Virus record (IMG/VR): IMGVR_UViG_3300017917_000952
Coordinates: 142,752-206,751 of that record
DNA: 64,000 nucleotides
Strand: one strand, 5' to 3'
Shown here piece by piece: positions 54,953 through 64,000 of this stretch. Both the position numbers and the translations under genes were made by a program. A model generated the notes under the pieces. The model did not search any database. It was not told the origin of the DNA and saw only the letters and a list, made by a program, of their open reading frames with translations. Every line of letters starts with the position of its first letter. The first letter of the stretch is position 1.

Positions 54953-54970
54953 GGTAAAAAATTTTTTACC
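54953..54970. repeat. Perfect 18-bp palindrome GGTAAAAAATTTTTTACC between convergent genes
   Basis: Read directly from the sequence. Confidence 0.8.
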
Positions 54971-55733
54971 CTACATTAAAACCCAACTTAACCAAATCTC
55001 TAACTATATAGTCCTGTGTCCAATGCAGCAGCGTCTCCGGCCCAGGATGATAAGCGCCTGACAGGCCTAGATCACGAGCCTGATCACGTACACAGCCCCA
55101 AGCCCTAATACGCCCCCAATCCTCAGGTCCATAGTTATAAGCATAGTAGTGTAGAGTTGGACAGCCCAGCATTGAATCCACGCTAAGGGCATAATAGTCT
55201 AATAATGCACGACTGTGAGTCTCGTTAACTGCATACTGAGCAGCCAAAGGGTTTAAGTGACAGTTCCAAGGTCCCCAACTGTCCACACTGTCTGAATCCT
55301 TAAACACACTGAGTCTGTGTACTCCGGGCCATAGATATACAGCGGCTAGTGGCTTGATACCATAACTAGCAATACGAACAGTGTTAGCCCACTGAAAAAG
55401 ATCGTCCGTAGCACCCTGTCCTAGATTTACTACTGGAATGCCCGTAATACGCTGTAACTGGCTACTCATAGTATCACCGTCGTCAACTCCGGGTGCAAAC
55501 TGATAACTACAGCCAAACATAACAATGCTGTTAGCCCAGTCTATACTATCGAACTCTGGACAGCGATAGCCCTGACTGTTTACAGTGTAGCGAACTGTAC
55601 GATCGCGCCACGGCCAGTCTGAGCTCTGCACCCGTAGATTATGCTCGTATAATTCCCTACTGTCCGTACCGTAGAAGAATGGTGGTTCATGTTGGAGTCC
55701 GTGCCAGTGACTAGATAATAACTGTAAGCTCAT
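54966..55733 (-). CDS. Hypothetical protein, SGNH-hydrolase-like
   Basis: NSQGYR, FGCS, NLG..G and D...HPG motifs; TAAATA 6 nt before the ATG. Confidence 0.6.
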   Translation of the reverse strand: MSLQLLSSHWHGLQHEPPFFYGTDSRELYEHNLRVQSSDWPWRDRTVRYTVNSQGYRCPEFDSIDWANSIVMFGCSYQFAPGVDDGDTMSSQLQRITGIPVVNLGQGATDDLFQWANTVRIASYGIKPLAAVYLWPGVHRLSVFKDSDSVDSWGPWNCHLNPLAAQYAVNETHSRALLDYYALSVDSMLGCPTLHYYAYNYGPEDWGRIRAWGCVRDQARDLGLSGAYHPGPETLLHWTQDYIVRDLVKLGFNVG

Positions 55734-55767: not shown

Positions 55768-55870
55768 CTATATAGTAAGCAAAAAAATTGCTAAAAAAAA
55801 TTTTTGACTACAGGGAAGCGCAGAGTAGGGAAGTTTTACAGGGCCCGGTCTATATAGTAGCAAAAAATTG
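55768..55870. repeat. Imperfect direct repeat CTATATAGTA(A)GCAAAAAA(A)TTG, two copies, in a non-coding gap
   Basis: Copies at 55768-55790 and 55850-55870. Confidence 0.75.
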
Positions 55871-55971
55871 GGCGCAAAAATAACGAAGGTTTTGGAGATC
55901 TCAACCGACCAGGTTTTACTCTAACACCAACATTTTACGGCATGCTGCTATGCTACTTTAGTATTACTTTT

Positions 55972-56011
55972 AAAAAAGCACCTGACCACCCTCCCCACCC
56001 TGGCCAGGTGC
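55972..56011 (-). terminator. Intrinsic terminator closing the early region
   Basis: Minus strand GCACCTGGCCA-12-TGGTCAGGTGC-TTTTTT, with one G-U pair that forms only on the minus strand. Confidence 0.8.
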
Positions 56012-56020
56012 CCCCACCGT

Positions 56021-56305
56021 TCAATCTTCTTCAACAACCTCACAGTCCCAGCGTTCGTCTGCAGGGTCGTAGCCTTCTTCTATGAGCTCCTGTACAGCGG
56101 CGTTGAACTCTGACTCAAGGTCCCATACAGCAGCCGCTACACGGATGTCCTTCTTGCGGCGTGCCCGTGCTGTGCCTGCTTGATAGACTAGTGGGTAGTG
56201 ATTGGCACAGTAGCTCTTGCCAGGTAGTGTAGGCTTACCGCAGGCGTGTGTGCCCTCGCCCAAGTAGGTACACTCTGTTACTGCTGTGCGCTTATCGTTG
56301 ATCAT
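56021..56305 (-). CDS. GcrA C-terminal-domain-like Cys3His protein
   Basis: C.Y.G.....CG.....GKSYC..H...VY pattern. Confidence 0.5.
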   Translation of the reverse strand: MINDKRTAVTECTYLGEGTHACGKPTLPGKSYCANHYPLVYQAGTARARRKKDIRVAAAVWDLESEFNAAVQELIEEGYDPADERWDCEVVEED

Positions 56306-56513
56306 TGTTGTTGTCCTTAGTGTCCAATTCAGGGTGACGCTTGCGGTACTCTGCTACTTCCTTCTGTATCTGCTCAATGAGCTCTGCTCGTGTCACGTGC
56401 TCTACACAGACAAATAGAGCCAAGATACACCAAAAGCCCCAAGTGTTCCAGTCCTGCCCAACTGCGTCTAACACTAGACCCAATGTAGCGTATAGCGTTA
56501 GACGCAGTAGCAT
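56292..56513 (-). CDS. Small membrane protein
   Basis: Two hydrophobic segments. Confidence 0.6.
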   Translation of the reverse strand: MLLRLTLYATLGLVLDAVGQDWNTWGFWCILALFVCVEHVTRAELIEQIQKEVAEYRKRHPELDTKDNNNDQR

Positions 56514-56514
56514 A

Positions 56515-57396
56515 TTAGCCTCGCTTCATGCAGGTAGTCTGTGCCATAGCAGTCCAAGCCTTGGGGAATGCCTTACGCAGATCCGCAATCTTGAGCACCA
56601 TACGCAGGCTGAGCTCACGCAGGCGGTCCTTGTTCTTGTTGATGAAGTCCAGGACTTCTTGCACAACAACGGGCTCGAACTCGTAGCGGTCCAACATGCC
56701 CTTTTCCACAATGTTCTTGATCCACAGCATCTTTTCACGCTGGGTGTCCATTTCCAAGTCCATGTAGTGGCAACGGCTTTCCAATGCGTCCAAGTGGCTA
56801 CGCAGTTTCTTGCTACGAACGTGCTCGAACTTAATATTAGTGATGAAGATAGCCGCACCCTTGAACTCAAAGCGGTCCGGAATGCCTTCACTGCGAAGGA
56901 TTCGGCTGTCCGTGTTCCACGAGATGAAGCGACGGTTGCCGCTGTCCAGAGCACCCTTGAGGATGTTCAAGCTCAGTTCTTCCTGCAGGATGTCGTCACA
57001 GTCGTCAAAGACTAGGACATGCTTTGAGTCCGAGAACTCGTAGAGCTTACTGTACAGGCCAATGGAGCTCATGGCACCCTTGACAACTTCGAACTTGGGC
57101 TTGCGTTCGCCCAGAGTATCAAACAGGCCGTCCTTTTGCAGTACTGCCTCCACATTGTGACTTTTACCAACGCCGGGAGGGCCGCTGACAATCATAGCAC
57201 GGACATCGCCACGCTTGACAGCCTTGGTCATCTCAGTGAGGATCTCAAAGCGCTCGTTGAGTCGCTCCAGAATTGCTTCGTCGCTTTCTTTGGCGATGCT
57301 GGCTTCTTTGGCTGCAATTGCATCGGTGTCCAGCTCAATGACGTTGCTGGTAACAGTGGCCTTGCTGGGCTTGCGAGCGGCGGAGGTACGTGCCAT
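56515..57396 (-). CDS. P-loop / AAA+ ATPase
   Basis: GPPGVGKS, VLVFDDCD, IFITN and ALESR motifs. Confidence 0.85.
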   Translation of the reverse strand: MARTSAARKPSKATVTSNVIELDTDAIAAKEASIAKESDEAILERLNERFEILTEMTKAVKRGDVRAMIVSGPPGVGKSHNVEAVLQKDGLFDTLGERKPKFEVVKGAMSSIGLYSKLYEFSDSKHVLVFDDCDDILQEELSLNILKGALDSGNRRFISWNTDSRILRSEGIPDRFEFKGAAIFITNIKFEHVRSKKLRSHLDALESRCHYMDLEMDTQREKMLWIKNIVEKGMLDRYEFEPVVVQEVLDFINKNKDRLRELSLRMVLKIADLRKAFPKAWTAMAQTTCMKRG

Positions 57397-57427
57397 TTGT
57401 GTTCCTTAGTGTGTTGTTGAAGTGTGT

Positions 57428-57456
57428 ATTATACTGTCGAAGGGCCTGTCTGTCAA
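57428..57456 (-). promoter_or_regulatory. Early promoter P1, TTGACA-17-TATAAT, with CA-rich leader and TAAGGA
   Basis: Exact consensus; GAAGGGC/GCCCTTC inverted repeat around the -35. Confidence 0.85.
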
Positions 57457-57473
57457 GCCCTTCTGCACTACAA

Positions 57474-57815
57474 TCAGTCCAGACGCGAACCAGCGTAGGC
57501 TTCGAAGCCATACTTGCGGAACACGTCAGCCGCGGCCTGTGCACCTGCTTCCAGAATGCCCACAGATTGGACGGGCAGTTTGGCAGGGTTCCACAGTTGG
57601 AAGGCCTTGGTGTAGTCTTGACGCACACCAGCGGCTTTCAGCATCTTGCCCAACTTGGTGTTGCCTTTGATCTTGTAGATGTTGGTCCAAGCAAAGCCGC
57701 AGGCATCACGATCACCGTACTTAGCCAGGGCGTCACGAGCAGCCTTGTTGGCTTCTTGCATGGCTTCGGCAACGATTGCGTTCACTTGCTCTTGGGTCAG
57801 GGTCAGTTGGGTCAT
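57474..57815 (-). CDS. Hypothetical early protein (DACGFAW motif)
   Basis: Own promoter and AAGGAG RBS. Confidence 0.75.
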   Translation of the reverse strand: MTQLTLTQEQVNAIVAEAMQEANKAARDALAKYGDRDACGFAWTNIYKIKGNTKLGKMLKAAGVRQDYTKAFQLWNPAKLPVQSVGILEAGAQAAADVFRKYGFEAYAGSRLD

Positions 57816-57847
57816 CTAGTGCTCCTTAGTGCGTTGTTGATGTGTGT

Positions 57848-57876
57848 ATTATACGGGTTTTTGGATGACCCGTCAA
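57848..57876 (-). promoter_or_regulatory. Early promoter P2, TTGACG-17-TATAAT
   Basis: Shared leader ending TAAGGAGCA. Confidence 0.85.
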
Positions 57877-57885
57877 CCACTAAGG

Positions 57886-58101
57886 TTAATCCTTTTTGTT
57901 GGTGATGTGGCTTTTAAACAACAGGCCGCAGAGCAGGCTAAGACCCCAGGCCTGTAGCCAGGTGATCTCCGGGAGCTTGAAGATCGACGGAATCACAGCG
58001 TCCCACAGTAGCATCACGGGCAAGGCCAGCAGGAAGCTCAGGAGTACGATCAGGGCGATGCCTGCGATCACAGTTGCGATGATGGTGCCTAGTGCGTTCA
58101 T
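57886..58101 (-). CDS. Small two-TM membrane protein
   Basis: Hydrophobic; LW....P..F.LP.IT..QA.GL..L motif. Confidence 0.7.
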   Translation of the reverse strand: MNALGTIIATVIAGIALIVLLSFLLALPVMLLWDAVIPSIFKLPEITWLQAWGLSLLCGLLFKSHITNKKD

Positions 58102-58343
58102 TTGCTGACTTTCTTGATCAGTTGGTTGGCCACGGTCATGTCGGAGTTGATGCCGTCATAGCATTGTTCGACGATGCTCATGATCATGAGGTCTACGATG
58201 CTCTTGGCTTCGTTGCGAAGTTTCTTTGTGGGCAGACCGTTGATGAATCGATCAACATCTGCTTTGTCGTTGCAGGCCCAGATGATGTCAGCCAGGACTC
58301 GTTGCTGGGCGTTGAGCCCTTCGATGGTGAACTCTACGCTCAT
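58098..58343 (-). CDS. Hypothetical early protein
   Basis: GAGGAG RBS; ATGA coupling. Confidence 0.7.
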   Translation of the reverse strand: MSVEFTIEGLNAQQRVLADIIWACNDKADVDRFINGLPTKKLRNEAKSIVDLMIMSIVEQCYDGINSDMTVANQLIKKVSK

Positions 58344-58346
58344 TGC

Positions 58347-58544
58347 TTACTCCTCGTTGATCAGGCTAACACCGAACAGGCCCAGCATGGCGCAGGTCAC
58401 TGCGGCACCAGCAAGGGCGAACCACTCTTTGAATCCTGCTTCGGGCGGCAGGTTCTCAACACCGCCAGCGACACCCATGAACCCGATGATGCAGAGGACC
58501 ACTGCCACTGCGCCGATGTTTTTGACCTTTTGCTTGAATTCCAT
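58347..58544 (-). CDS. Small two-TM membrane protein
   Basis: Own promoter and RBS; two hydrophobic segments. Confidence 0.7.
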   Translation of the reverse strand: MEFKQKVKNIGAVAVVLCIIGFMGVAGGVENLPPEAGFKEWFALAGAAVTCAMLGLFGVSLINEE

Positions 58545-58570
58545 TGTGTGCTCCTTGTTGCGATGTATGT

Positions 58571-58599
58571 ATTATAAGGCCGATTGGCCTCAGTGTCAA
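58571..58599 (-). promoter_or_regulatory. Early promoter P3, TTGACA-17-TATAAT
   Basis: The -35 contains the TGA stop of the upstream gene; 28-bp leader identical to P8. Confidence 0.85.
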
Positions 58600-58829
58600 C
58601 CCCAGTTCTTCTTGTCGCCGAACTGTTCGTTGTCACGGTAGCCTGCGGTGTAGGCTGCGATTTCTTCTGCGGTCATGCAGGCCATCTCAACCCGCGGGCT
58701 GGTCATCGTTGCACCCACATAGAAGTGAGGGTTGAAAGGACGGCCGTAGTAGGAATCGGCACTGCCACGATCGTAAGGGCCACCGTGGCGTTCATCATAG
58801 CCCGCTTTGTTCATCTCTTGCATCAGCAT
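58596..58829 (-). CDS. Hypothetical early protein (HGGPYDRGSADSYY motif)
   Basis: Own promoter and RBS. Confidence 0.75.
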   Translation of the reverse strand: MLMQEMNKAGYDERHGGPYDRGSADSYYGRPFNPHFYVGATMTSPRVEMACMTAEEIAAYTAGYRDNEQFGDKKNWG

Positions 58830-58857
58830 CTCTGCTCCTTTGTGTGTCTATGTGTGT

Positions 58858-58886
58858 ATTATACGATCAAAACGGCACGTCGTCAA
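58858..58886 (-). promoter_or_regulatory. Early promoter P4, TTGACG-17-TATAAT
   Basis: The -35 is encoded by the F-D-D codons of the upstream gene. Confidence 0.8.
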
Positions 58887-59097
58887 ACTCGTATTGTTCG
58901 TCGTACCAGTTGTCGTTGGTCTGGGGCGTCAGGACCGTGTCAACATGAACGGTGCCCAGGCTTTGCAGTTCCTGGATCTCCTGCTTGATTTCAGCACGGC
59001 GGGCATCAATCTTAGCATTGGACTCAGGGTCCAGTTCGCCAGCGATCTCGTCCAGGTAGATCAGTTCTTCGTACAGGTTGTTGATCTCGTCTTGCAT
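58867..59097 (-). CDS. Acidic early protein with SSB-Ct-like tail (EFDDVPF)
   Basis: Own promoter and RBS; C-terminus resembles bacterial SSB DFDDDIPF. Confidence 0.7.
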   Translation of the reverse strand: MQDEINNLYEELIYLDEIAGELDPESNAKIDARRAEIKQEIQELQSLGTVHVDTVLTPQTNDNWYDEQYEFDDVPF

Positions 59098-59123
59098 CGT
59101 GTGCTCCTTGTTGTGATGTGTGT

Positions 59124-59153
59124 ATTATACACTCGCAATGGCTGACAGAGCAA
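59124..59153 (-). promoter_or_regulatory. Early promoter P5, TTGCTC-18-TATAAT
   Basis: The -10 contains the TAA stop of the upstream gene; shared leader. Confidence 0.7.
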
Positions 59154-59238
59154 CCATAATCCAGATGGCAATCAGTTGAGCGATGCCAAAGTAGAACATG
59201 GCCCAAACCACTGTACAAAAACCAATGATCTTCAACAT
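59125..59238 (-). CDS. 37-aa membrane peptide (MLKIIGFC...IASV)
   Basis: TAAGGAG RBS; entirely hydrophobic; 3' part of ORF 59125..59427. Confidence 0.6.
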   Translation of the reverse strand: MLKIIGFCTVVWAMFYFGIAQLIAIWIMVALSAIASV

Positions 59239-59248
59239 CGTGCTCTCC

Positions 59249-59563
59249 TTAGCGGCAGACTTGACCGTAGAACTGACCTTGCTGGGTGTAGAGGGGGAAG
59301 CAACCGTTGGGCGCAGGGTAGGCAGGGCTATACTGCGGCAGGGTGCGAACTTCGGGCTGTTGGTACACAGGCGCAGGCAGGGTCTGCGTCTGTTGATAGA
59401 CAACCTGCGGCTGAGGCTGAACAACAACCTGCGGGCGGCTCATCTGTTGGTAGATCCAGTAGCCTGCAACACCAGCCAGGGCGCCTTGTTCACGGGGACC
59501 CCAAGCCAGTGCAGAACCTGTGGCTGTGATTGCGATCAAACCTGCTACGATTGCCTTTTTCAT
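59249..59563 (-). CDS. Secreted/periplasmic Pro-Gln-rich protein
   Basis: Signal peptide MKKAIVAGLIAITATGSALA; own promoter and RBS. Confidence 0.7.
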   Translation of the reverse strand: MKKAIVAGLIAITATGSALAWGPREQGALAGVAGYWIYQQMSRPQVVVQPQPQVVYQQTQTLPAPVYQQPEVRTLPQYSPAYPAPNGCFPLYTQQGQFYGQVCR

Positions 59564-59594
59564 CTTGAGCTCCTTTTTCGCTGTCGATGTGTGT

Positions 59595-59623
59595 ATTATA
59601 CGGCCGTTGGAAAAACCTGTCAA
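59595..59623 (-). promoter_or_regulatory. Early promoter P6, TTGACA-17-TATAAT
   Basis: Exact consensus; upstream AACCCT motif. Confidence 0.85.
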
Positions 59624-59626
59624 CCT

Positions 59627-59971
59627 TTAGGGTTGTTGTTTTTCTGCCACATGCTTGCACTGACCGCGGAACTTGAACCCAGGACAGGTACAGGACCAAA
59701 CGCCATCTTCTTCAGTGAGGTAATACTTCTCGCCACGACTGCCCTCTACGGTGATCACGCCCGGGTCCACGGTTGGAGTGCCTTCTTCAAGCTCAACAAA
59801 GGTCCTGCCTCGCGTGTCGAGCTTCAAGGGGTTCTTGAACTTGAACAACTTCTTAGAACCTCTGGGCACATAGGCCACAGCCTGCGTCATCGAGTCGTTC
59901 ATCACGTAGACGTGGTTGCAGTTCTGACCAAAGCCGTCAGTCCAAGTAGTGGTCTCAAGCATTATCTTCAT
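59627..59971 (-). CDS. SWIM zinc-finger protein (leaderless)
   Basis: WSCTCPGF.FR..CKHV motif; ATG 6 nt after TATAAT. Confidence 0.8.
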   Translation of the reverse strand: MKIMLETTTWTDGFGQNCNHVYVMNDSMTQAVAYVPRGSKKLFKFKNPLKLDTRGRTFVELEEGTPTVDPGVITVEGSRGEKYYLTEEDGVWSCTCPGFKFRGQCKHVAEKQQP

Positions 59972-59977
59972 GACTGT

Positions 59978-60006
59978 ATTATACGGTCAATCGATCTGGA
60001 TGTCAA
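59978..60006 (-). promoter_or_regulatory. Early promoter P7, TTGACA-17-TATAAT-6-ATG (leaderless)
   Basis: The -35 lies inside the V-D codons of the upstream gene. Confidence 0.8.
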
Positions 60007-60172
60007 CCAAGCGGCCTTCGCGGAAGATGAAGTATTCGTTGATCATGCCGTAGTAGGCCCAGATGCAGTCGTTGCCCGGGACCAGGGTGTAGCTCTTGAT
60101 CCCTCGCTTTTCATAGTGCTCTGCAACCAGAAGGACTTCCAGTTCGTTTAGGCTAGGGTCAATTCGGATCAT
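59987..60172 (-). CDS. Hypothetical early protein
   Basis: 61 aa; ATGA coupling. Confidence 0.65.
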   Translation of the reverse strand: MIRIDPSLNELEVLLVAEHYEKRGIKSYTLVPGNDCIWAYYGMINEYFIFREGRLVDIQID

Positions 60173-60384
60173 GCTCGCTCCATCATTCTCATCAGTTCAT
60201 TGTGCAGGTAGCCCATTTCCTCGTGCTCCACATAGAAGTCAGTACGGGGATCCCAGTAGCGACCTTCCTTCGGATCGTAGTACAGAACACGACCACCTGC
60301 GAACACGAACGGTCCTTCGAGGCCTTTGCGTGGGCCGTAGCCCTGGAGCAGTTCTTCCGTCTTACCAAGCACCTTGTATCCCAT
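60169..60384 (-). CDS. Hypothetical early protein (GLEGPF...LYYDPKEG.Y.DP.TD motif)
   Basis: Own promoter and RBS. Confidence 0.75.
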   Translation of the reverse strand: MGYKVLGKTEELLQGYGPRKGLEGPFVFAGGRVLYYDPKEGRYWDPRTDFYVEHEEMGYLHNELMRMMERA

Positions 60385-60410
60385 AGTCTGCTCCTTGTTG
60401 CGATGTATGT

Positions 60411-60439
60411 ATTATATCACCAATTGGAGTGCCTGTCAA
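60411..60439 (-). promoter_or_regulatory. Early promoter P8, TTGACA-17-TATAAT
   Basis: The -35 and spacer lie in the upstream coding sequence; its stop abuts the -10. Confidence 0.85.
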
Positions 60440-60764
60440 CCTCTTCTTGCGTGAATTGCCCGCCGCTACGGTCGGGATTTGCGGCCCAACTCTCCTGCAA
60501 TCTGCGCTCGCGCTCTGCTTCGTGCTTAGGGTCAATGTAGGCACTGTCCAGCAAGAGTTGATAGGCCAACTTCTCCAGGTTTGAGGGCATGTCGCCCATG
60601 GCTACACGGTTAGGAATCCGCTCCAGTTCGTCGATGCACTTCTGCACGAAGTCCACATGCATCTCAATGCCCACACTGTGCATAGGACGAAGCAGAACGA
60701 CGGGAGCAGTGCCCTTGGGTTGCAGGTTAGCCCTAAGGCGTTGGATGATGTCTTGGTCTTTCAT
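60417..60764 (-). CDS. Hypothetical early protein
   Basis: 115 aa; C-terminal SW..NPDRSGGQFT.EE motif. Confidence 0.65.
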   Translation of the reverse strand: MKDQDIIQRLRANLQPKGTAPVVLLRPMHSVGIEMHVDFVQKCIDELERIPNRVAMGDMPSNLEKLAYQLLLDSAYIDPKHEAERERRLQESWAANPDRSGGQFTQEEVDRHSNW

Positions 60765-60925
60765 ACGTTCACCTGTAAGACAACAGTTTCGTCGTCGTAT
60801 TCGTTAGCCTCGAAGTGATCCACCTGCTCTACATCGTAGATCTCTCCGCCCATGTTGTCATTAACTTCGACCAAGCAATCCTGCGGCATGGTCTTCAGGA
60901 TCTTGATCAGTTCTGCTACAGTCAT
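60761..60925 (-). CDS. 54-aa acidic hypothetical protein (MTVAELIKIL...), not in the ORF track
   Basis: Manually translated open frame; AAGGA RBS; ATGA coupling. Confidence 0.65.
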   Translation of the reverse strand: MTVAELIKILKTMPQDCLVEVNDNMGGEIYDVEQVDHFEANEYDDETVVLQVNV

Positions 60926-60926
60926 T

Positions 60927-61115
60927 TCAACGGTCCTTCAGTCGCTTCATGACCTTGAGCAGGTCGGGGTTGTTTTTGATCTTCTCCATAGCAGCCTCTT
61001 GCCGCTCCCACAGCAGGCGCTCGGCTTCAGTTTCCAGATTGTTGGCATAGTGGCCGTTGCCGCGATTCTGATCCTGCTTCTGCCACTTTGCGATCTGCTT
61101 CTTGGAAACTTTCAT
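60927..61115 (-). CDS. Hypothetical early protein
   Basis: Start MKVSKK after AAGGAGCA and promoter P9. Confidence 0.7.
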   Translation of the reverse strand: MKVSKKQIAKWQKQDQNRGNGHYANNLETEAERLLWERQEAAMEKIKNNPDLLKVMKRLKDR

Positions 61116-61142
61116 CGTCTGCTCCTTGCTGTCTATGTGTGT

Positions 61143-61184
61143 ATTATACCTTCTTTTGGATAACCCGTCAACCAAACGGGTTAT
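61143..61184 (-). promoter_or_regulatory. Early promoter P9, TTGACG-17-TATAAT, with 9-bp inverted repeat ATAACCCGT/ACGGGTTAT
   Basis: Repeat arms at 61160-68 and 61176-84. Confidence 0.85.
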
Positions 61185-61309
61185 TCGCTCCAAACGGGTT
61201 CGAAGGTGTAGCCCTTTTGCTGATAGTAGAGTCCATCGAAACTCTGCCAATCGCGGATGGGGATTACCAGTCCCAACTCTACTACACGGTAAGCAACAAT
61301 CGTCTTCAT
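61181..61309 (-). CDS. 42-aa hypothetical protein (leaderless)
   Basis: TATAAT-ACACAC-ATG; MKTIVAYR... Confidence 0.6.
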   Translation of the reverse strand: MKTIVAYRVVELGLVIPIRDWQSFDGLYYQQKGYTFEPVWSE

Positions 61310-61315
61310 GTGTGT

Positions 61316-61345
61316 ATTATACAGTCTCTTTGGCAGTTTGGACAA
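61316..61345 (-). promoter_or_regulatory. Early promoter P10, TTGTCC-18-TATAAT-6-ATG (leaderless)
   Basis: The -10 contains the upstream TAA stop. Confidence 0.7.
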
Positions 61346-61457
61346 CCGAATTGTCAAACAATGTGCCACCGTAGGCCTGCTGGAATGTCTGGGCAGTGGC
61401 CAGCAGGTAGAACTGATAGACGCGGCCGGTAGGAGTGATCAGTGTGTACTTCATCAT
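61317..61457 (-). CDS. 46-aa hypothetical protein (MMKYTLITPTGRVYQFY...), not in the ORF track
   Basis: Manually translated; TAATG overlap with the upstream gene; ends in the P10 -10 box. Confidence 0.6.
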   Translation of the reverse strand: MMKYTLITPTGRVYQFYLLATAQTFQQAYGGTLFDNSVVQTAKETV

Positions 61458-61641
61458 TACTTCTCGATTTTAACGCAAATGGGGGTCTTGATGTTCATGC
61501 CCCAGCGGAGATCGTCAACGGCCTTGTAGACAACCTTAGCGGCTGCTTCGCACTTTTCTTTAGTAGTGTGAACTCAGGGCCCATGTTCCAGTTGCTACCA
61601 GTGCCTACTACAATCATGACCCAAACAACCATTGCGTTCAT
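61457..61641 (-). pseudogene. Small exported/membrane protein gene with a frameshift near 61566-61570
   Basis: Removing 2 nt (AC) joins MNAMVV...GPEF to TTKEKCEAAAK...ICVKIEK*, whose stop overlaps the next ATG. Confidence 0.6.
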
Positions 61642-61668
61642 CGTGTGCTCCTTACTGTCTATGCATGT

Positions 61669-61711
61669 ATTATAACACCGTTTTGGATAACCCGTCAACC
61701 ACTAGGGTTAT
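61669..61711 (-). promoter_or_regulatory. Early promoter P11, TTGACG-18-TATAAT, with ATAACCC-11-GGGTTAT
   Basis: 21 bp identical to P9. Confidence 0.8.
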
Positions 61712-61717
61712 AGAGTC

Positions 61718-61751
61718 AAAAGAATAGGGCGGCTCTCCCGAGCGGCCCTAT
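61718..61751 (-). terminator. Intrinsic terminator with GGGA tetraloop
   Basis: ATAGGGC-C-GCTC-GGGA-GAGC-C-GCCCTAT-TCTTTT. Confidence 0.75.
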
Positions 61752-61823
61752 CCAACACTAACACGGCTGAGGGAGCAACTCAACCGGCCCGGGACACTAC
61801 CCCCGGGACTTCGGAGCAACCAA
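61718..61823 (-). ncRNA. Candidate structured 3'-UTR/small RNA with two GUUGCUCC anti-SD motifs
   Basis: Three hairpins, two with G-U pairs that form only on the minus strand; no ORF; ends in a terminator. Confidence 0.4.
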
Positions 61824-62093
61824 TTAAGCGAGGCCTAACTGGATGGCACGGTAACCAGCGGCAACAACACGACGGCTGGGCATACCGATTTCATATTCGG
61901 TAACAGTAACACCATTACCAGCCTTGCGAGTGTTTGCATAAACAGCATAACCTGCTTGACGGATACGGCTTGCCTCTGCGGCAACGTTCTTGATACCGAA
62001 ACGCTTCTGTGCTTCAGAAGCAGTAACTTTCTCACCACTCTTCAATGCGGTCAGCATCTTGAATGTCTTTGTACCTTGATTGATCTTCAACAT
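61824..62093 (-). CDS. Winged helix-turn-helix DNA-binding protein
   Basis: L.AL.SG...T..EA..RFG..N..A..S.IR..GY pattern; CAAGGA RBS. Confidence 0.75.
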   Translation of the reverse strand: MLKINQGTKTFKMLTALKSGEKVTASEAQKRFGIKNVAAEASRIRQAGYAVYANTRKAGNGVTVTEYEIGMPSRRVVAAGYRAIQLGLA

Positions 62094-62109
62094 TTTCTTT
62101 TCCTTGTTT

Positions 62110-62162
62110 TTAGACTGCTGTGCAGTTGATATAATAGTACAGCAGTCTAAGGTCAAGGTCAA
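62110..62162 (-). promoter_or_regulatory. Promoter P12 (TTGACC-17-TACTAT) with 12-bp perfect inverted repeat TTAGACTGCTGT/ACAGCAGTCTAA, operator-like
   Basis: Arms at 62110-21 and 62139-50 flank the -10 and start site; the -35 contains the upstream TGA. Confidence 0.7.
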
Positions 62163-62377
62163 GCATCAATCTTGCCAAATTCTTTTTGTGTGTAGTATTG
62201 GTTTAACCTACGCTGAATCATCGTAAGCAGATCACCGTGATCGTCCGAAACAATGAATCGGACAGGGCAACGGCCCCAGGTGTTGTGCTTGACGAATTCA
62301 AAATACCATTTGCGGTGCTGACGATTCGTCTCGTCAAAAGCCACCCAAGGTCTACCAACGAATGCTAATCTGCTCAT
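62159..62377 (-). CDS. Hypothetical protein (RP.V.FD..N..HR...W..CPVRF motif)
   Basis: GGAG RBS. Confidence 0.7.
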   Translation of the reverse strand: MSRLAFVGRPWVAFDETNRQHRKWYFEFVKHNTWGRCPVRFIVSDDHGDLLTMIQRRLNQYYTQKEFGKIDA

Positions 62378-62467
62378 CTGTTTGCTCCAGTGAATATCCC
62401 GCTGTATTGTGTAGATACCCGGTCTTACGGCACTCTGGCCCGCCGGGCGCCTTCACACGGCAGTAAC

Positions 62468-62884
62468 TTAGAACGGAGCGTCTTCCAGTTGTGCTTCGAC
62501 TTCAGCCTTGGAAACAACAGTTTCTTTGACAGCGGTCTTAGCCTTAGCAGCCTTGGCCTTTGCCTTGATAGCGTCCATAGACGGCTTGGACTTCTTGGCA
62601 GGAGCCTTGGCCTTAGGTGCAGCCTTAGCAGCCTTAGGGGTCTCGGTGCGCTTCTCAACCTCTGCTTCGATAGCGGCACGAACTGCGGCATTGCCGTTGT
62701 CAAAGTTGATCTGAAGCAGGAATGCCACAGCCTCGTCTTTGGTCATCGGATGCTTGAGCTCGATGATATCAATGTCCTTGTGGCCGTTCTTGGCCAGGAC
62801 CTTAACACGCATCTGATCATTAGCAAAGCGAGCCTTGATCTTGCCGTTGAGAGTAGAAACACCTGCGAACTTGAATGTAGACAT
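62468..62884 (-). CDS. Protein with histone-H1-like Ala/Lys/Pro tail ending LEDAPF
   Basis: AKAAPKAKAPAKK repeats; AAGGAG RBS. Confidence 0.75.
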   Translation of the reverse strand: MSTFKFAGVSTLNGKIKARFANDQMRVKVLAKNGHKDIDIIELKHPMTKDEAVAFLLQINFDNGNAAVRAAIEAEVEKRTETPKAAKAAPKAKAPAKKSKPSMDAIKAKAKAAKAKTAVKETVVSKAEVEAQLEDAPF

Positions 62885-62944
62885 GAAAATCTCCTTGTGT
62901 GTATGTCTGTGAATGTCTGCGTCATTACCTAACGCATTAATAAT

Positions 62945-62973
62945 AGTTTAACGTCTTTGGACAGGTTTGTCAA
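62945..62973 (-). promoter_or_regulatory. Promoter P13, TTGACA-17-TAAACT; leader has a 5' hairpin
   Basis: Leader hairpin UGCGUUA-5-UGACGCA followed by a CA-rich tract. Confidence 0.7.
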
Positions 62974-62983
62974 CCAAAATGTG

Positions 62984-63169
62984 TCAAGAGTTTAGTGTGT
63001 TGTATGGGCTAAGTTCATCCTCCTGTGGCGAATCTGCCACACCAAAACTTTCCAGAACCTCGAGCACCGTTTCGATTGGGCAGTTCAGTTCTGCGGCAAT
63101 CCGTTTGGCACTCAGGCCGTCAATGTACAGTTGTTCAATGTCGTACAGTAGCTCTGCAACCTTGCTCAT
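62984..63169 (-). CDS. Small HTH-like protein
   Basis: G.SA..IA..L.CP...V..V pattern. Confidence 0.6.
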   Translation of the reverse strand: MSKVAELLYDIEQLYIDGLSAKRIAAELNCPIETVLEVLESFGVADSPQEDELSPYNTLNS

Positions 63170-63552
63170 TCTTCGTTCTCCATTGCTTGAAACTCAAAAG
63201 CCTCGCTCAGCAGTCCGTCAAACTCACCGTAGAACTCCACGTACCAACGGCCGTCGCGACGCAGGATATAGTTGTATTCTTCGAACTGGCCGTTCTTGCG
63301 ATAGTCAGCATAGTCCTTAAACATACGCTGAGGGCAGTCCTCGCCGCGTTCCTTGTAGAACTCACAGCCGTCAACGGTCTCGCTCAGCGTAGACATGTCG
63401 CCGTTGTCCAGCAGTTCGCGGACTTCGAACGGATCGGTGTAGGCATTCAGCAGGATCTTGCCGTTGTGATCCAGGTAGCCATCCCAGTGGCAGTAGATTT
63501 GACCCACGGTACCGTCTGCGTATTCCAGGGCGATCATGCTTCGTGTTGCCAT
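63166..63552 (-). CDS. Hypothetical phage early protein (M.TRS.I...YCHWDGY family)
   Basis: Own promoter and RBS. Confidence 0.75.
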   Translation of the reverse strand: MATRSMIALEYADGTVGQIYCHWDGYLDHNGKILLNAYTDPFEVRELLDNGDMSTLSETVDGCEFYKERGEDCPQRMFKDYADYRKNGQFEEYNYILRRDGRWYVEFYGEFDGLLSEAFEFQAMENEE

Positions 63553-63586
63553 TTGCGTTGCTCCTTAGTGCGTTGTCGATGTGCTA

Positions 63587-63615
63587 ATTATACAGTGGTT
63601 TTACCAACCTGTCAA
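63587..63615 (-). promoter_or_regulatory. Early promoter P14, TTGACA-17-TATAAT
   Basis: Leader shares 18 bp with P2. Confidence 0.85.
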
Positions 63616-63619
63616 CCAA

Positions 63620-63763
63620 TTACTTGGCCTTTTTGGCGGGCTTCTGCTTGGCTTCCTGGGCAGCAATCTTGCCACTGTAGGCACTGCCGGCCTTGTGGAT
63701 CAGACCAGTCTTGGTGAAAGTGATAGTGCCGCCAGTGCTAGAAGGAATAGTTTTGCCGATCAT
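63620..63763 (-). CDS. 47-aa basic hypothetical protein
   Basis: Start MIGKT after GGAGCA and P15. Confidence 0.65.
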   Translation of the reverse strand: MIGKTIPSSTGGTITFTKTGLIHKAGSAYSGKIAAQEAKQKPAKKAK

Positions 63764-63794
63764 TGTGTGCTCCAATTGCGTTGTTGATGTGTGT

Positions 63795-63823
63795 ATTATA
63801 GCAGGACTTCTAAGCCCTGTCAA
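63795..63823 (-). promoter_or_regulatory. Early promoter P15, TTGACA-17-TATAAT
   Basis: Exact consensus; TAACCCTAG motif upstream. Confidence 0.85.
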
Positions 63824-63832
63824 CTACTAGGG

Positions 63833-64000
63833 TTAATCTAGCAGGCACTTGACCACAATAGCAGGGCCGTAGGCCCAAGGACCATTACCGCCATCAGTGA
63901 CCTTGACATTCTCAGCGCCTGCGGCCTTTTGCAGAGCGATAAGCAGATTGGTGTTGTTGCGGAAGTAGCACTTGACACGGCGCTCCGTGCCAGTGTGGGC
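63833..64000 (-). CDS. 3' part of a hypothetical protein running off the window edge
   Basis: Open frame ...RRVKCYF...KCLLD*; its stop is the TAA of the TAACCC motif. Confidence 0.55.
   Translation of the reverse strand, partial: AHTGTERRVKCYFRNNTNLLIALQKAAGAENVKVTDGGNGPWAYGPAIVVKCLLD

What the first reader, a model, noticed from the sequence alone, without database searches (positions are those of the whole stretch)
57397..63835. Array of early genes, most fronted by a reiterated promoter-leader-RBS cassette
Seen: 15 sigma70 promoters in about 6.4 kb on the minus strand. 13 have an exact TATAAT and 12 have TTGAC(A/G), mostly at 17 bp. Most continue with the same element TATAAT-ACA(C/T)AC-AT-(CA-rich)-AAGGAGCA-N-ATG. 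Some copies share identical blocks: 28 bp at 58549-76 and 60389-416, 21 bp at 61154-74 and 61681-701, 18 bp at 57820-37 and 63559-76. The genes between them are short and unrelated. Established: repeated early-promoter elements (PeSL-type) occur in hypervariable regions of T4-type phages and are proposed to mediate gene shuffling. Inference: this is a promoter-bounded cassette array in which the repeats act as recombination joints and together form a strong RNA-polymerase sink for host takeover.
Basis: partly seen in the sequence, partly recalled or inferred. Interest (0 to 1): 0.8.

Follow-up and report, generated by a model that had tools for sequence, protein, structure and literature searches.

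The report
Shuffling promoter-cassette array, jumbo-phage early genes
One end of an uncultured freshwater jumbo-phage genome carries about 25 tiny unrelated genes, most behind a copy of the same near-perfect bacterial promoter plus leader, and comparison with about 200 relatives shows that genes have been swapped at these copies; this extends the T4-type "PeSL" gene-shuffling idea to a new phage lineage with population-scale data.

Summary
There are 15 sigma70-type sites on the minus strand of 57397-63835: 13 with exact TATAAT, 12 with TTGAC(A/G), and three exact shared blocks of 28, 21 and 18 bp. The window is the end of a 206.7-kb IMG/VR contig of a jumbo myovirus distantly related to PA5oct. 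At least 200 related loci carry the same one-strand arrays. Their consensus is GG-TTGACA-N12-TGn-TATAAT-ACAYACAT, followed by a CA-rich unstructured leader and AAGGAGC. Gene order in the arrays is shuffled. Homology breakpoints concentrate in the cassettes. The -35/spacer half travels with the upstream gene and the ITS/leader half with the downstream gene, switching at the invariant -10/+1 core. Non-orthologous cassettes in one genome are homogenised, and each genome has its own "house" ITS. This is the behaviour described for PeSLs of T4-type phages, so the recombination-joint reading is supported by correlation. The RNA-polymerase-sink idea and early timing remain untested. New points: about 11% of cassettes place ATG exactly at the predicted +1 (leaderless, conserved within gene families); stem-loops occur in only a subset; and array genes have GC3 of 0.63 against 0.32 in the rest of the genome. 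Verdict: a new variant of a known kind, of moderate interest.

The parts
63764..63823 (-). Cassette P1: TTGACA-17-TATAAT-ACACACAT, leader, GGAGCA; drives g1
63553..63615 (-). Cassette P2: TTGACA-17-TATAAT-TAGCACAT, leader CGACAACGCACTAAGGAGCA; drives g2-g3
   Evidence: 18-bp block shared with P14
62885..62973 (-). P3: atypical promoter TTGACA-17-TAAACT with a 60-nt leader and AAGGAG; drives g4-g5
   Evidence: A promoter sits between g3 and g4 in many relatives.
62094..62162 (-). P4: weak site TTGACC-17-TACTAT; drives g6
   Evidence: The homology unit shared with L010 begins 25 nt upstream of it.
61716..61753 (-). Intrinsic terminator after g6 (12-bp stem, GGGA loop, U-tract), preceded by two more hairpins; directly abuts P5, forming a composite terminator/promoter
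   Evidence: z = -2.8
61642..61698 (-). Cassette P5: TTGACG-18-TATAAT-ACATGCAT; drives g7-g8
   Evidence: 21-bp block shared with P7
61310..61345 (-). Cassette P6 (weak -35, TTGTCC): leaderless form, ATG of g9 lies 6 nt after TATAAT; the g8 stop codon lies inside the -10 box
61116..61171 (-). Cassette P7: TTGACG-17-TATAAT-ACACACAT; a 10-bp hairpin encloses the -35; drives g10-g12
60385..60439 (-). Cassette P8: TTGACA-17-TATAAT-ACATACAT; drives g13-g14
   Evidence: 28-bp block shared with P13
59972..60006 (-). Cassette P9: TTGACA-17-TATAAT-ACAGTC-ATG; leaderless start of g15
59564..59623 (-). Cassette P10: TTGACA-17-TATAAT-ACACACAT; drives g16-g17
59098..59152 (-). Cassette P11 (poor -35, TTGCTC; lies inside the 3' end of g17): TATAAT-ACACACAT; drives g18
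58830..58886 (-). Cassette P12: TTGACG-17-TATAAT-ACACACAT; drives g19
58545..58599 (-). Cassette P13: TTGACA-17-TATAAT-ACATACAT; drives g20-g22
57816..57876 (-). Cassette P14: TTGACG-17-TATAAT-ACACACAT. It is a mosaic: the upstream half resembles P5/P7 and the leader resembles P15/P1. Drives g23.
57397..57456 (-). Cassette P15: TTGACA-17-TATAAT-ACACACTT; a 10-bp hairpin encloses the -35; drives g24-g26
63833..64000 (-). g0, cut by the contig end. Homologs in L204-L206 have their own cassette.
62984..63763 (-). g1 (63620-63763, 47 aa), g2 (63166-63552, 128 aa, phrog_1987), g3 (62984-63169, 61 aa, weak HTH)
61824..62884 (-). g4 (62468-62884, 138 aa, Lys/Ala-rich tail), g5 (62159-62377, 72 aa), g6 (61824-62093, 89 aa, winged HTH PF14090); a backbone block conserved in most relatives
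60417..61641 (-). g7 (61495-61641, frameshifted; the reading frame continues to 61458), g8 (61317-61457), g9 (61181-61309), g10 (60927-61115), g11 (60761-60925), g12 (60417-60764); nearly unique to this genome
57886..60384 (-). g13 (60169-60384), g14 (59987-60172), g15 (59627-59971, SWIM zinc finger), g16 (59249-59563), g17 (59125-59238), g18 (58867-59097), g19 (58596-58829), g20 (58347-58544), g21 (58098-58343), g22 (57886-58101); these genes change position among relatives
56021..57815 (-). g23 (57474-57815, phrog_22149), g24 (56515-57396, 293 aa, homolog of T4-type NrdC.10 and PA5oct gp126), g25 (56292-56513), g26 (56021-56305)
55968..56015 (-). Strong intrinsic terminator (15-bp stem plus U6) that closes the array after g26
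   Evidence: z = -3.0

Best explanation
The region is the hyperplastic, presumably early, gene region of an uncultured freshwater jumbo myovirus. Host sigma70 RNA polymerase is predicted to start at about 15 near-consensus promoters, one per 1-3 short accessory genes. Each promoter belongs to a reiterated cassette. The cassette runs from the upstream stop codon through (GG)TTGACA, a 17-nt spacer and TATAAT to the conserved initial sequence ACAYAC-AT. A G-poor, CA-rich leader with little structure follows, then AAGGAGC and ATG. Transcripts accumulate along two blocks that end at intrinsic terminators after g6 and after g26. In about one cassette in ten the leader is missing and the ATG is the conserved +1 'AT' plus G, giving a leaderless mRNA. 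The cassettes also act as portable homology. Crossovers within the invariant -10/+1 core, and less often at the -35 or the SD, swap, delete, insert and re-order the flanking genes. Every product keeps a working promoter and ribosome-binding site, and the cassettes of one genome stay homogenised. This is the PeSL mechanism of T4-type phages. Shown here: the sequence anatomy, shuffled gene order, breakpoint placement and concerted evolution. Inferred: start sites, early timing, promoter strength, leaderless translation, and homologous recombination as the cause rather than selection acting on its products.
For: Anatomy and non-randomness in the window.

Family-wide arrays: 10-26 cassettes per locus on the gene strand against 0-2 on the other. 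TTGACN-N17-TATAAT gives 922 unique sites on the array strand against 34 on the opposite strand in 2.18 Mb.

Independent conserved positions: GG at -25/-24, TG at -3/-2, and the ITS A.C.A.Y.A.C.A.T at 62-82%.

Leader structure: less than in shuffles by +0.5 to +0.8 kcal/mol.

Leaderless spike: 127 ATGs exactly 6 nt after the -10, and 77% of them open >=40 codons. The state is conserved in gene families (24/26, 6/6, 6/6).

Shuffled order; even the backbone is broken in L204/L205.

Breakpoints: ends of >=88%-identity homology blocks lie within -50..+40 of a -10 box in 35-43% of cases against 6% for random positions. Within arrays, 112 of 234 ends lie in cassettes that occupy 11% of the sequence. 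Per junction the rates are 19.8% against 6.9%. The successor gene is conserved across 22.6% of promoter junctions against 39.6% of promoter-less junctions.

Switch point: pairs sharing only the downstream gene are at baseline until the spacer (0.37-0.44), then reach 0.80 in the ITS. Pairs sharing only the upstream gene keep 0.53-0.57 through the spacer and fall to baseline at the ATG.

Window examples: the g1 unit runs from 63803 (3 nt before the P1 -10) to 63629 (14 nt before the P2 -35); the P4-g6-terminator unit ends 20 nt before the P5 -35; g24 homology starts just before the P15 -10.

Mosaic cassettes inside the window.

Concerted evolution: non-orthologous cassettes have >=70% identical spacers in 9.5% of within-genome pairs against 1.2% of between-genome pairs, and ITS variants are genome-specific.

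Strain-level contigs from other samples join or diverge inside cassettes, including a hybrid with a P1-type spacer and a P14-type leader.

Precedent: PeSL crossovers were mapped between the -10 and the SD/ATG, and circles were detected (PMC2839356). PA5oct early genes use TTGAC/TATAATA promoters (PMC7318152).
Against: There is no transcript 5'-end data; read laying gave only contigs and no start or end pile-ups.

The comparative statistics count related loci and pairs that are not independent.

Breakpoint enrichment at promoters could partly reflect selection: only rearrangements that keep genes expressed survive. It could also reflect local divergence of intergenic DNA.

About 20% of breakpoints lie at promoter-less gene starts and about 32% elsewhere. 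The g11 loss uses a 4-nt ATGA overlap.

The adjacency effect is moderate (22.6% against 39.6%).

The identical core is short (14-28 bp), so homologous exchange would be inefficient.

Stem-loops, a named PeSL component, are only enriched and not universal (>=8 bp in 27.5% against 11% in controls), and they lack U-tracts.

No circles or junction reads were demonstrated.
Confidence: 0.72

Rival explanations
1. The cassettes are only strong promoters and translation signals. Their similarity reflects selection for function, and the rearrangements occur by unrelated mechanisms.
For: The most conserved positions are the functional ones: -35, -10, ITS and SD. Many breakpoints lie outside cassettes. 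PA5oct uses the same -35/-10 motifs without a dense array.
Against: Spacers and sequence upstream of the -35, which function does not constrain, are near-identical between non-orthologous cassettes of one genome 8 times more often than between genomes. ITS variants are genome-specific. The identity switch is centred on the core. Cassette halves assort almost independently within the window.
Confidence: 0.13
2. Moron-type accretion: each gene arrived with its own complete promoter as an independent insertion, with breakpoints upstream of the promoter and no exchange inside it.
For: Some homology blocks begin just upstream of the -35 (17 of 144 left ends at -35..-23). The P4-g6-terminator unit moves as a whole.
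Against: When only the downstream gene is shared (>=85% aa, n=121), the spacer and upstream flank are near baseline (0.37-0.44 and 0.27) while the ITS is at 0.80. When only the upstream gene is shared, the spacer stays at 0.53-0.57. So the promoter is usually split between the two neighbours.
Confidence: 0.08
3. The main function is to act as an RNA-polymerase sink: dense consensus promoters titrate host sigma70 holoenzyme for host takeover, and the genes are secondary.
For: Seven perfect and four 11/12 consensus promoters lie in 6.4 kb. Native PeSL promoters were reported to be too strong to clone unmutated (PMC2839356).
Against: Many downstream genes are conserved across hundreds of genomes with intact ORFs and tuned leaders, which argues that expression of the genes is selected. 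A few dozen sites per entering genome is few compared with the number of RNA polymerase molecules in a cell (background knowledge).
Confidence: 0.05
4. Assembly artefact: a chimeric contig joins a 53%-GC element to a 40%-GC phage, or repeats have been collapsed or mis-joined.
For: A sharp compositional change (GC3 0.63 against 0.32). The array lies at a contig end. Contigs of other runs break at cassettes.
Against: Independent assemblies from many samples link the array to the NrdC.10-like gene g24 and its downstream genes, and they show the same GC offset. Runs X1 and X2 hold 99% and 94% of the words. g24 is a PA5oct/T4-type gene, as are the structural genes.
Confidence: 0.02

Closest known systems
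PeSL (promoter-early stem-loop) cassettes of T4-type phages: RB49/phi1, T4/PST, KVP40/nt-1 (PMC2839356, PMC4122927)
   Same: Both are composite repeats that run from the upstream stop codon through a near-perfect TTGACA-N17-TATAAT to the SD and ATG. Both cluster in a one-strand run of small ORFans (RB49: 8 in about 5 kb; here 15 in 6.4 kb). Both are associated with insertions, deletions and replacements between relatives. Exchange points lie between the -10 and the SD/ATG. Stem-loops may overlap the -35.
   Different: The lineage is different: a PA5oct-like jumbo phage, with TerL 54% identical to PA5oct. There is no AT-rich upstream tract; GG precedes the -35 instead. Stem-loops are only enriched, are short, and lack polyG/polyC or U-tracts; the window has one true terminator/promoter composite (before P5). 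The initial transcribed sequence and the CA-rich leader are strongly conserved. A leaderless sub-form exists. Each genome has its own 'house' ITS. The evidence here is comparative only; circles were not tested.
Early region and promoters of Pseudomonas phage PA5oct (PMC7318152)
   Same: Nearest cultured relative by TerL and by the NrdC.10-like protein. It depends on host RNA polymerase, its promoters have TTGAC and TATAATA motifs, and its early genes are dozens of small unknown ORFs on one strand at a genome end.
   Different: PA5oct has 32 promoters in 287 kb and no dense cassette array in gp36-gp101. It shares none of the array proteins except gp126. Its early block lies downstream of the NrdC.10-like gene, not upstream.
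T4 early promoters and the nrdC-region hyperplastic segment
   Same: In both, sigma70-dependent promoters with extended conservation front many short non-essential early genes. g24 is homologous to T4-type nrdC.10.
   Different: The T4 consensus differs (TTTACW/TAYWAT, PMC4122927), and the density is much lower. No Alt/MotA-type context was examined here.
Leaderless mRNAs (for example lambda cI from PRM) and CA-rich translation enhancers
   Same: The AUG sits at the transcript 5' end, and G-poor CA-rich leaders favour initiation.
   Different: Here the leaderless form is a regular variant (about 11%) of a repeated promoter cassette, with the ATG built on the conserved +1 'AT'. Expression was not tested.
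Integron gene cassettes
   Same: Arrays of short, unrelated, promoter-dependent genes that are exchanged at a repeated joint, possibly via circles.
   Different: No integrase or attC-like folded site was found. Every gene has its own promoter. Exchange appears to be homology-driven.

Membership tests
PeSL cassette | Near-consensus sigma70-type -35/-10 with a 17-nt spacer | tested here: met
   7 sites at 12/12 and 4 at 11/12 in the window; 922 TTGACN-N17-TATAAT sites on the array strand of relatives against 34 on the opposite strand
PeSL cassette | Element bounded by the upstream gene's stop codon and the downstream SD plus ATG, with conservation spread over about 60-100 bp | tested here: met
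   Stop codons lie 0-25 nt before the -35, or inside the promoter in 42% of cases. AAGGAGC plus ATG lies 25-34 nt after the -10. Shared blocks reach 28 bp.
PeSL cassette | Stem-loop structure within or next to the promoter | tested here: inconclusive
   Stems of >=8 bp occur in 27.5% against 11% of flank-shuffled controls, mostly enclosing the -35. MFE excess is only -1 to -1.6 kcal/mol. In the window, stems of 7-10 bp occur at P1, P2, P7, P9, P10, P13 and P15; the others are weak.
PeSL cassette | The stem-loop acts as a terminator or attenuator | not testable with these tools
   Only the hairpin before P5 has a U-tract. The hairpins that enclose the -35 have none.
PeSL cassette | AT-rich tract upstream of the -35 | tested here: not met
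   Information content is about 0 from -45 to -27. GG occurs at -25/-24 in 68% of cassettes.
PeSL cassette | Clustered in a hyperplastic region of small ORFans | tested here: met
   About 25 short genes, mostly without family hits; gene content varies among relatives
PeSL cassette | Insertions, deletions and replacements between relatives have their joints in the element | tested here: met
   supporting evidence. The enrichment is 3-7 fold, not exclusive.
PeSL cassette | Recombination between neighbouring elements yields mini-circles | not testable with these tools
   Only assembled contigs were available; no inverse PCR or raw long reads
Phage early (host sigma70-dependent) promoter class | Transcription starts about 7 nt after the -10, within the first minutes of infection | not testable with these tools
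   There is indirect support only: an ATG spike exactly at the 7th nt after the -10, and array genes present in one metatranscriptome run as contigs.
Leaderless mRNA genes | The start codon coincides with the transcript 5' end and there is no SD | tested here: inconclusive
   The sequence pattern is met: 127 ATGs at d=6, 77% opening >=40 codons, conserved in families; g15 has a SWIM domain. The 5' ends and translation were not measured.

The most novel reading that the evidence does not exclude
The -10/+1 core of the cassette is a dedicated exchange site of an integron-like gene-capture system. On this reading, single-gene units bounded by half-promoters circulate, possibly as mini-circles, through a cosmopolitan freshwater jumbo-phage population and beyond (g2 and g23 homologs sit in unrelated phage types). 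The genome-specific ITS would mark each lineage's own recombination or transcription specificity, and leaderless fusions would be the scars of exchange at +1.
Probability: 0.12. Interest if true: 0.85.

Novelty: new variant of a known kind. Interest (0 to 1): 0.55.

Why it matters
PeSL-mediated shuffling has so far rested on three pairs of cultured T4-type phages. Here the same architecture appears in a different, uncultured and environmentally widespread jumbo-phage lineage. Hundreds of natural variants are available, so the exchange point can be mapped statistically to the -10/+1 core and concerted evolution of the cassettes can be seen. This makes the question of how phages turn over their host-takeover and anti-defence genes without breaking expression testable at population scale. 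It also yields a compact set of natural promoter, leader and leaderless modules. The extreme early/late codon-usage split (GC3 0.63 against 0.32) in one genome is a separate puzzle worth following.

Tried and rejected
Megablast of the array against 50,697 phage records found no match. No tRNA genes are present. An Rfam scan of 55-64 kb at E<=0.1 found nothing.

A search for a second copy of the contig-end sequence (terminal repeat or circular overlap) found only the contig itself.

The PA5oct early region was scanned for an equivalent array. It has only a few plausible sites against a strand-symmetric background, and no homologs of g0-g23.

Read laying was tried for transcription start sites. 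All four runs are stored as contigs, so there were no 5' pile-ups, and the short-sided joints are weak one by one.

A second motif downstream of the array (TTTGCTWACTATATAG) does not recur elsewhere in the window.

The g4-g5 intergenic region shows no significant fold (z = -0.3).

Comparing the N-termini of leaderless and leadered homologs was uninformative: only 8 of 443 pairs align from residue 1-3.

The unstratified half-tracking test gave only small effects because most pairs are too diverged. Stratifying by closeness was needed.

Full report
**1. Observation.**
Reading the minus strand of 57000-64000 and the consensus scan show a run of sigma70-type sites, all on the minus strand. Seven are perfect TTGACA-17-TATAAT and four score 11/12. 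In total 23 promoter-like sites were found in 54-64 kb against 8.4 +/- 2.9 in shuffles. Listing every TATAAT in the window gives 13 copies with a -35 partner, all between 57433 and 63800. Two degenerate sites bring the total to 15: P3 at 62973 (TAAACT) and P4 at 62162 (TACTAT). The extended motif TATAATACAYRCAT occurs 12 times in the array, twice elsewhere with two mismatches, and 2.7 times by chance. A strict whole-window scan finds 13 sites of >=10/12 in the array and none on its plus strand. The 19 sites in the other 57.6 kb are weaker and lack the ITS. The array proteins have no paralogs among themselves.

**2. What genome this is.**
The window is the last 64 kb of IMG/VR contig 3300017917_000952 (206,751 bp). 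Position 64000 is the contig end. Its plus-strand block encodes a tail sheath, tail fibres, terminase and helicases. The terminase is 54% identical to that of Pseudomonas jumbo phage PA5oct. There is no close DNA relative among cultured phages. Near-identical DNA occurs in pond, freshwater, estuary, wastewater and aquaculture metagenomes.

**3. Anatomy.**
Fifteen promoters drive about 26 minus-strand genes:
- P1 drives g1.
- P2 drives g2-g3.
- P3 drives g4-g5.
- P4 drives g6, followed by a terminator.
- P5 drives g7-g8.
- P6 drives g9.
- P7 drives g10-g12.
- P8 drives g13-g14.
- P9 drives g15.
- P10 drives g16-g17.
- P11 drives g18.
- P12 drives g19.
- P13 drives g20-g22.
- P14 drives g23.
- P15 drives g24-g26, followed by a terminator.

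Both terminators fold convincingly (z = -2.8 and -3.0). The array therefore consists of two multi-promoter blocks in which transcription would add up downstream.

The typical cassette starts at the upstream stop codon. Several copies read TAA-CCCTAGTGG-TTGAC, and in P6 the g8 stop lies inside the -10 box. The cassette continues through the -35, a 17-nt spacer, TATAAT, ACAYAC-AT, a G-poor leader, AAGGAGC and ATG. Two cassettes (P6 and P9) have no leader: the ATG begins 6 nt after TATAAT.

Most proteins are orphans. g6 is a winged HTH, g15 has a SWIM zinc finger and g3 a weak HTH. g24 is the homolog of T4-type NrdC.10 and PA5oct gp126.

**4. The family.**
Searching with g24 returned more than 587 relatives, of which 80 were kept. 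A DNA-motif scan returned 120 more stretches. Every relative with enough upstream sequence has 10-26 cassettes on the gene strand and 0-2 on the other.

With a selection that ignores the ITS (TTGACN-N17-TATAAT), 922 unique sites lie on the array strand and 34 on the opposite strand in 2.18 Mb. The eight bases after the -10 read A(.82) C(.62) A(.77) Y(.78) A(.69) C(.74) A(.70) T(.81). GG at -25/-24 and TG at -3/-2 were not part of any selection and are conserved in 56-69% of cassettes.

The transcribed leader and start region is less structured than shuffled sequence (+0.5 to +0.8 kcal/mol). The region from -70 to 0 is slightly more structured. Stems of >=8 bp occur in 27.5% of cassettes against 11% of controls, mostly enclosing the -35.

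**5. Leaderless sub-form.**
Start-codon distance from the -10 is bimodal. There is a broad SD-led mode at 25-34 nt and a spike at exactly 6 nt. The spike holds 127 ATGs, and 98 of them open >=40 codons. Leaderless status is inherited within gene families (24/26, 6/6 and 6/6 members) and switches in 12 families.

The g15 homolog in L139 keeps the same unusual ITS (ACAGTC) but has a leader with an SD.

This fixes the predicted +1 at the conserved A of 'AT'. It also predicts that about 11% of these genes are translated from leaderless mRNAs. Neither prediction has been measured.

**6. Are the repeats recombination joints?** Six lines of evidence bear on this.

(a) Gene order. A backbone (g2-g3|g4-g5-g6 ... 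g23|g24-g26) is common. However, g1, g13-g17, g19-g22 and even g23 occupy different places in different genomes. g7-g12 and g18 are nearly unique to the window. In L204/L205 the backbone itself is broken.

(b) Ends of homology blocks (>=88% identity, >=250 bp) between loci. They fall within -50..+40 of a -10 box in 43% (left ends) and 35% (right ends) of cases, against 6% for random positions. Inside arrays, 112 of 234 ends lie in cassettes that occupy 11% of the sequence. Another 48 lie within 30 nt of promoter-less gene starts (8.8% of the sequence), and 74 lie elsewhere. Per junction the rates are 19.8% against 6.9% (odds ratio 3.3; the pairs are not independent).

(c) Gene-family adjacency. 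The same successor gene follows in 22.6% of comparisons across promoter junctions and in 39.6% across promoter-less junctions. The bootstrap interval for the difference is 0.14-0.20.

(d) Which half goes with which gene.
- Pairs sharing only the downstream gene (>=85% aa identity, n=121) are at baseline upstream (0.26-0.28), near baseline in the spacer (0.37-0.44), and at 0.80 in the ITS.
- Pairs sharing only the upstream gene (n=35) keep 0.53-0.57 through the spacer and 0.69 in the ITS. They fall to baseline at the ATG.
- The switch therefore lies in the invariant TATAAT-ACAYACAT core. This is where PeSL mini-circle crossovers were mapped in RB49 (PMC2839356).

(e) Within the window, the cassette halves assort almost independently (Spearman 0.22). 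P14 has the upstream half of P5/P7 (81% and 72%) and the leader of P15/P1 (84% and 81%).

(f) Concerted evolution.
- Non-orthologous cassettes of one genome have >=70% identical spacers in 9.5% of pairs, against 1.2% between genomes.
- Each genome has its own dominant ITS: ACACACAT in the window, ACACAGAC in L002, ACATACAT in L015, ACAGACAT in L064 and TATACACT in L080.

Concrete cases in the window:
- The g1 unit, shared at 90% identity with L066, runs from 3 nt before the P1 -10 to 14 nt before the P2 -35.
- The P4-g6-terminator unit, shared with L010, ends 20 nt before the P5 -35.
- g24 homology with L002 starts just before the P15 -10.

Contigs from other samples add cassette-to-cassette joints, such as P13 spacer to P5 spacer and P8 -10 to P5 spacer. 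They also include a hybrid promoter with a P1-type spacer and a P14-type leader. They show one non-cassette event as well: exact loss of g11 at a 4-nt ATGA overlap. The sides of these joints are short, so they count only as supporting evidence.

**7. Limits.**
All recombination evidence is correlative. Selection for expressed products would also enrich surviving breakpoints at promoters. However, selection does not explain the spacer homogenisation or the split of the promoter between its two neighbours. Counts are inflated by relatedness among loci. Start sites, timing, promoter strength, circles and the RNA-polymerase-sink idea could not be tested. The only RNA run holds contigs over g2-g6, g16 and g20-g21, which shows presence in an RNA library and nothing more.

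**8. Comparison with known systems.**
PeSLs are defined as composites of the following parts: upstream stop codon, AT-rich tract, sigma70-like promoter, a stem-loop at variable positions, SD and ATG. They cluster in hyperplastic regions, sit next to indels, and can form mini-circles.

Features met here: the promoter, the boundaries, the clustering and the association with rearrangements. Partly met: the stem-loop. Not met: the AT-rich tract. Not testable: terminator activity and circles.

PA5oct, the nearest cultured relative, has TTGAC/TATAATA promoters and an early block of small genes at a genome end. It has no dense cassette array and no shared array genes except gp126.

I therefore file this as a new variant of the PeSL kind in a new lineage. 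Its distinctive features are a conserved ITS and leader, a leaderless sub-form, and genome-specific homogenisation.

**9. Verdict.**
The recombination-joint interpretation is supported by comparative data, and the sink interpretation is untested. Interest is moderate. The mechanism is known in principle. The lineage, the scale of the natural variation, the mapped switch point, the leaderless variant and the codon-usage split are new.

Noticed in passing
window 56021-63763 versus 61-50875: There is an extreme codon-usage split within one genome. Array genes have GC1/2/3 of 0.57/0.37/0.63, while plus-strand structural and replication genes have 0.50/0.45/0.32. Overall GC is 0.52-0.53 against 0.40. 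Relatives show the same offset, for example L003 at 0.50 against 0.41 and L013 at 0.49 against 0.40. Possible causes are early genes tuned to the host tRNA pool or drawn from a GC-richer gene pool. It remains unexplained.
   Followed up: partly
window 61458-61641 (g7): g7 is frameshifted in the window. Contigs of runs X3 and X4 lack bases 61567 and 61565, and without them the frame runs as one 60-aa ORF (an N-terminal hydrophobic segment plus a Cys-containing tail) to the stop at 61458. The window copy is either a pseudogene or an assembly error.
   Followed up: partly
window 60761-60925 (g11): A contig in run X3 skips 60760>60922, an exact loss of g11 at a shared 4-nt ATGA (stop/start overlap). 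This indel is gene-sized but not promoter-bounded.
   Followed up: partly
window 55768-55798 and 55850-55880, minus strand: Two copies of a different motif (TTTTTTGCT(T)ACTATATAG) lie between the array's final terminator and the next minus-strand ORF (54966-55733). This may be another promoter class. It does not recur elsewhere in the window.
   Followed up: partly
window 62468-62884 (g4): g4 has a Lys/Ala-rich, histone-H1-like C-terminal tail encoded by short internal DNA repeats (AGCCTTAGCAGCCTT twice). Relatives show length variation there, with joints at 62488>62604 and 62626>62771.
   Followed up: no
window 57474-57815 (g23), 56021-56305 (g26), 63166-63552 (g2): g23 homologs occur only in Roseobacter, Pelagibacter and Caulobacter podo- and siphophages (up to 60% identity). 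g26 has a sub-threshold match to the GcrA C-terminus. g2 homologs are in T4-like cyanophages and vibriophages. This suggests a gene pool shared across phage types, and is a weak hint of an alphaproteobacterial host.
   Followed up: partly
window 63833-64000 and L205:6000-10150: The contig ends inside g0. In relatives g0 has its own cassette, and the array continues about 4 kb further upstream. The window therefore shows a truncated array.
   Followed up: yes
window 61754-61823: Two further stable hairpins precede the terminator after g6, giving three stem-loops in 100 nt. Their role is unknown.
   Followed up: no
window 9085-16647: A 2520-aa plus-strand ORF lies in the structural block. It was not examined.
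   Followed up: no
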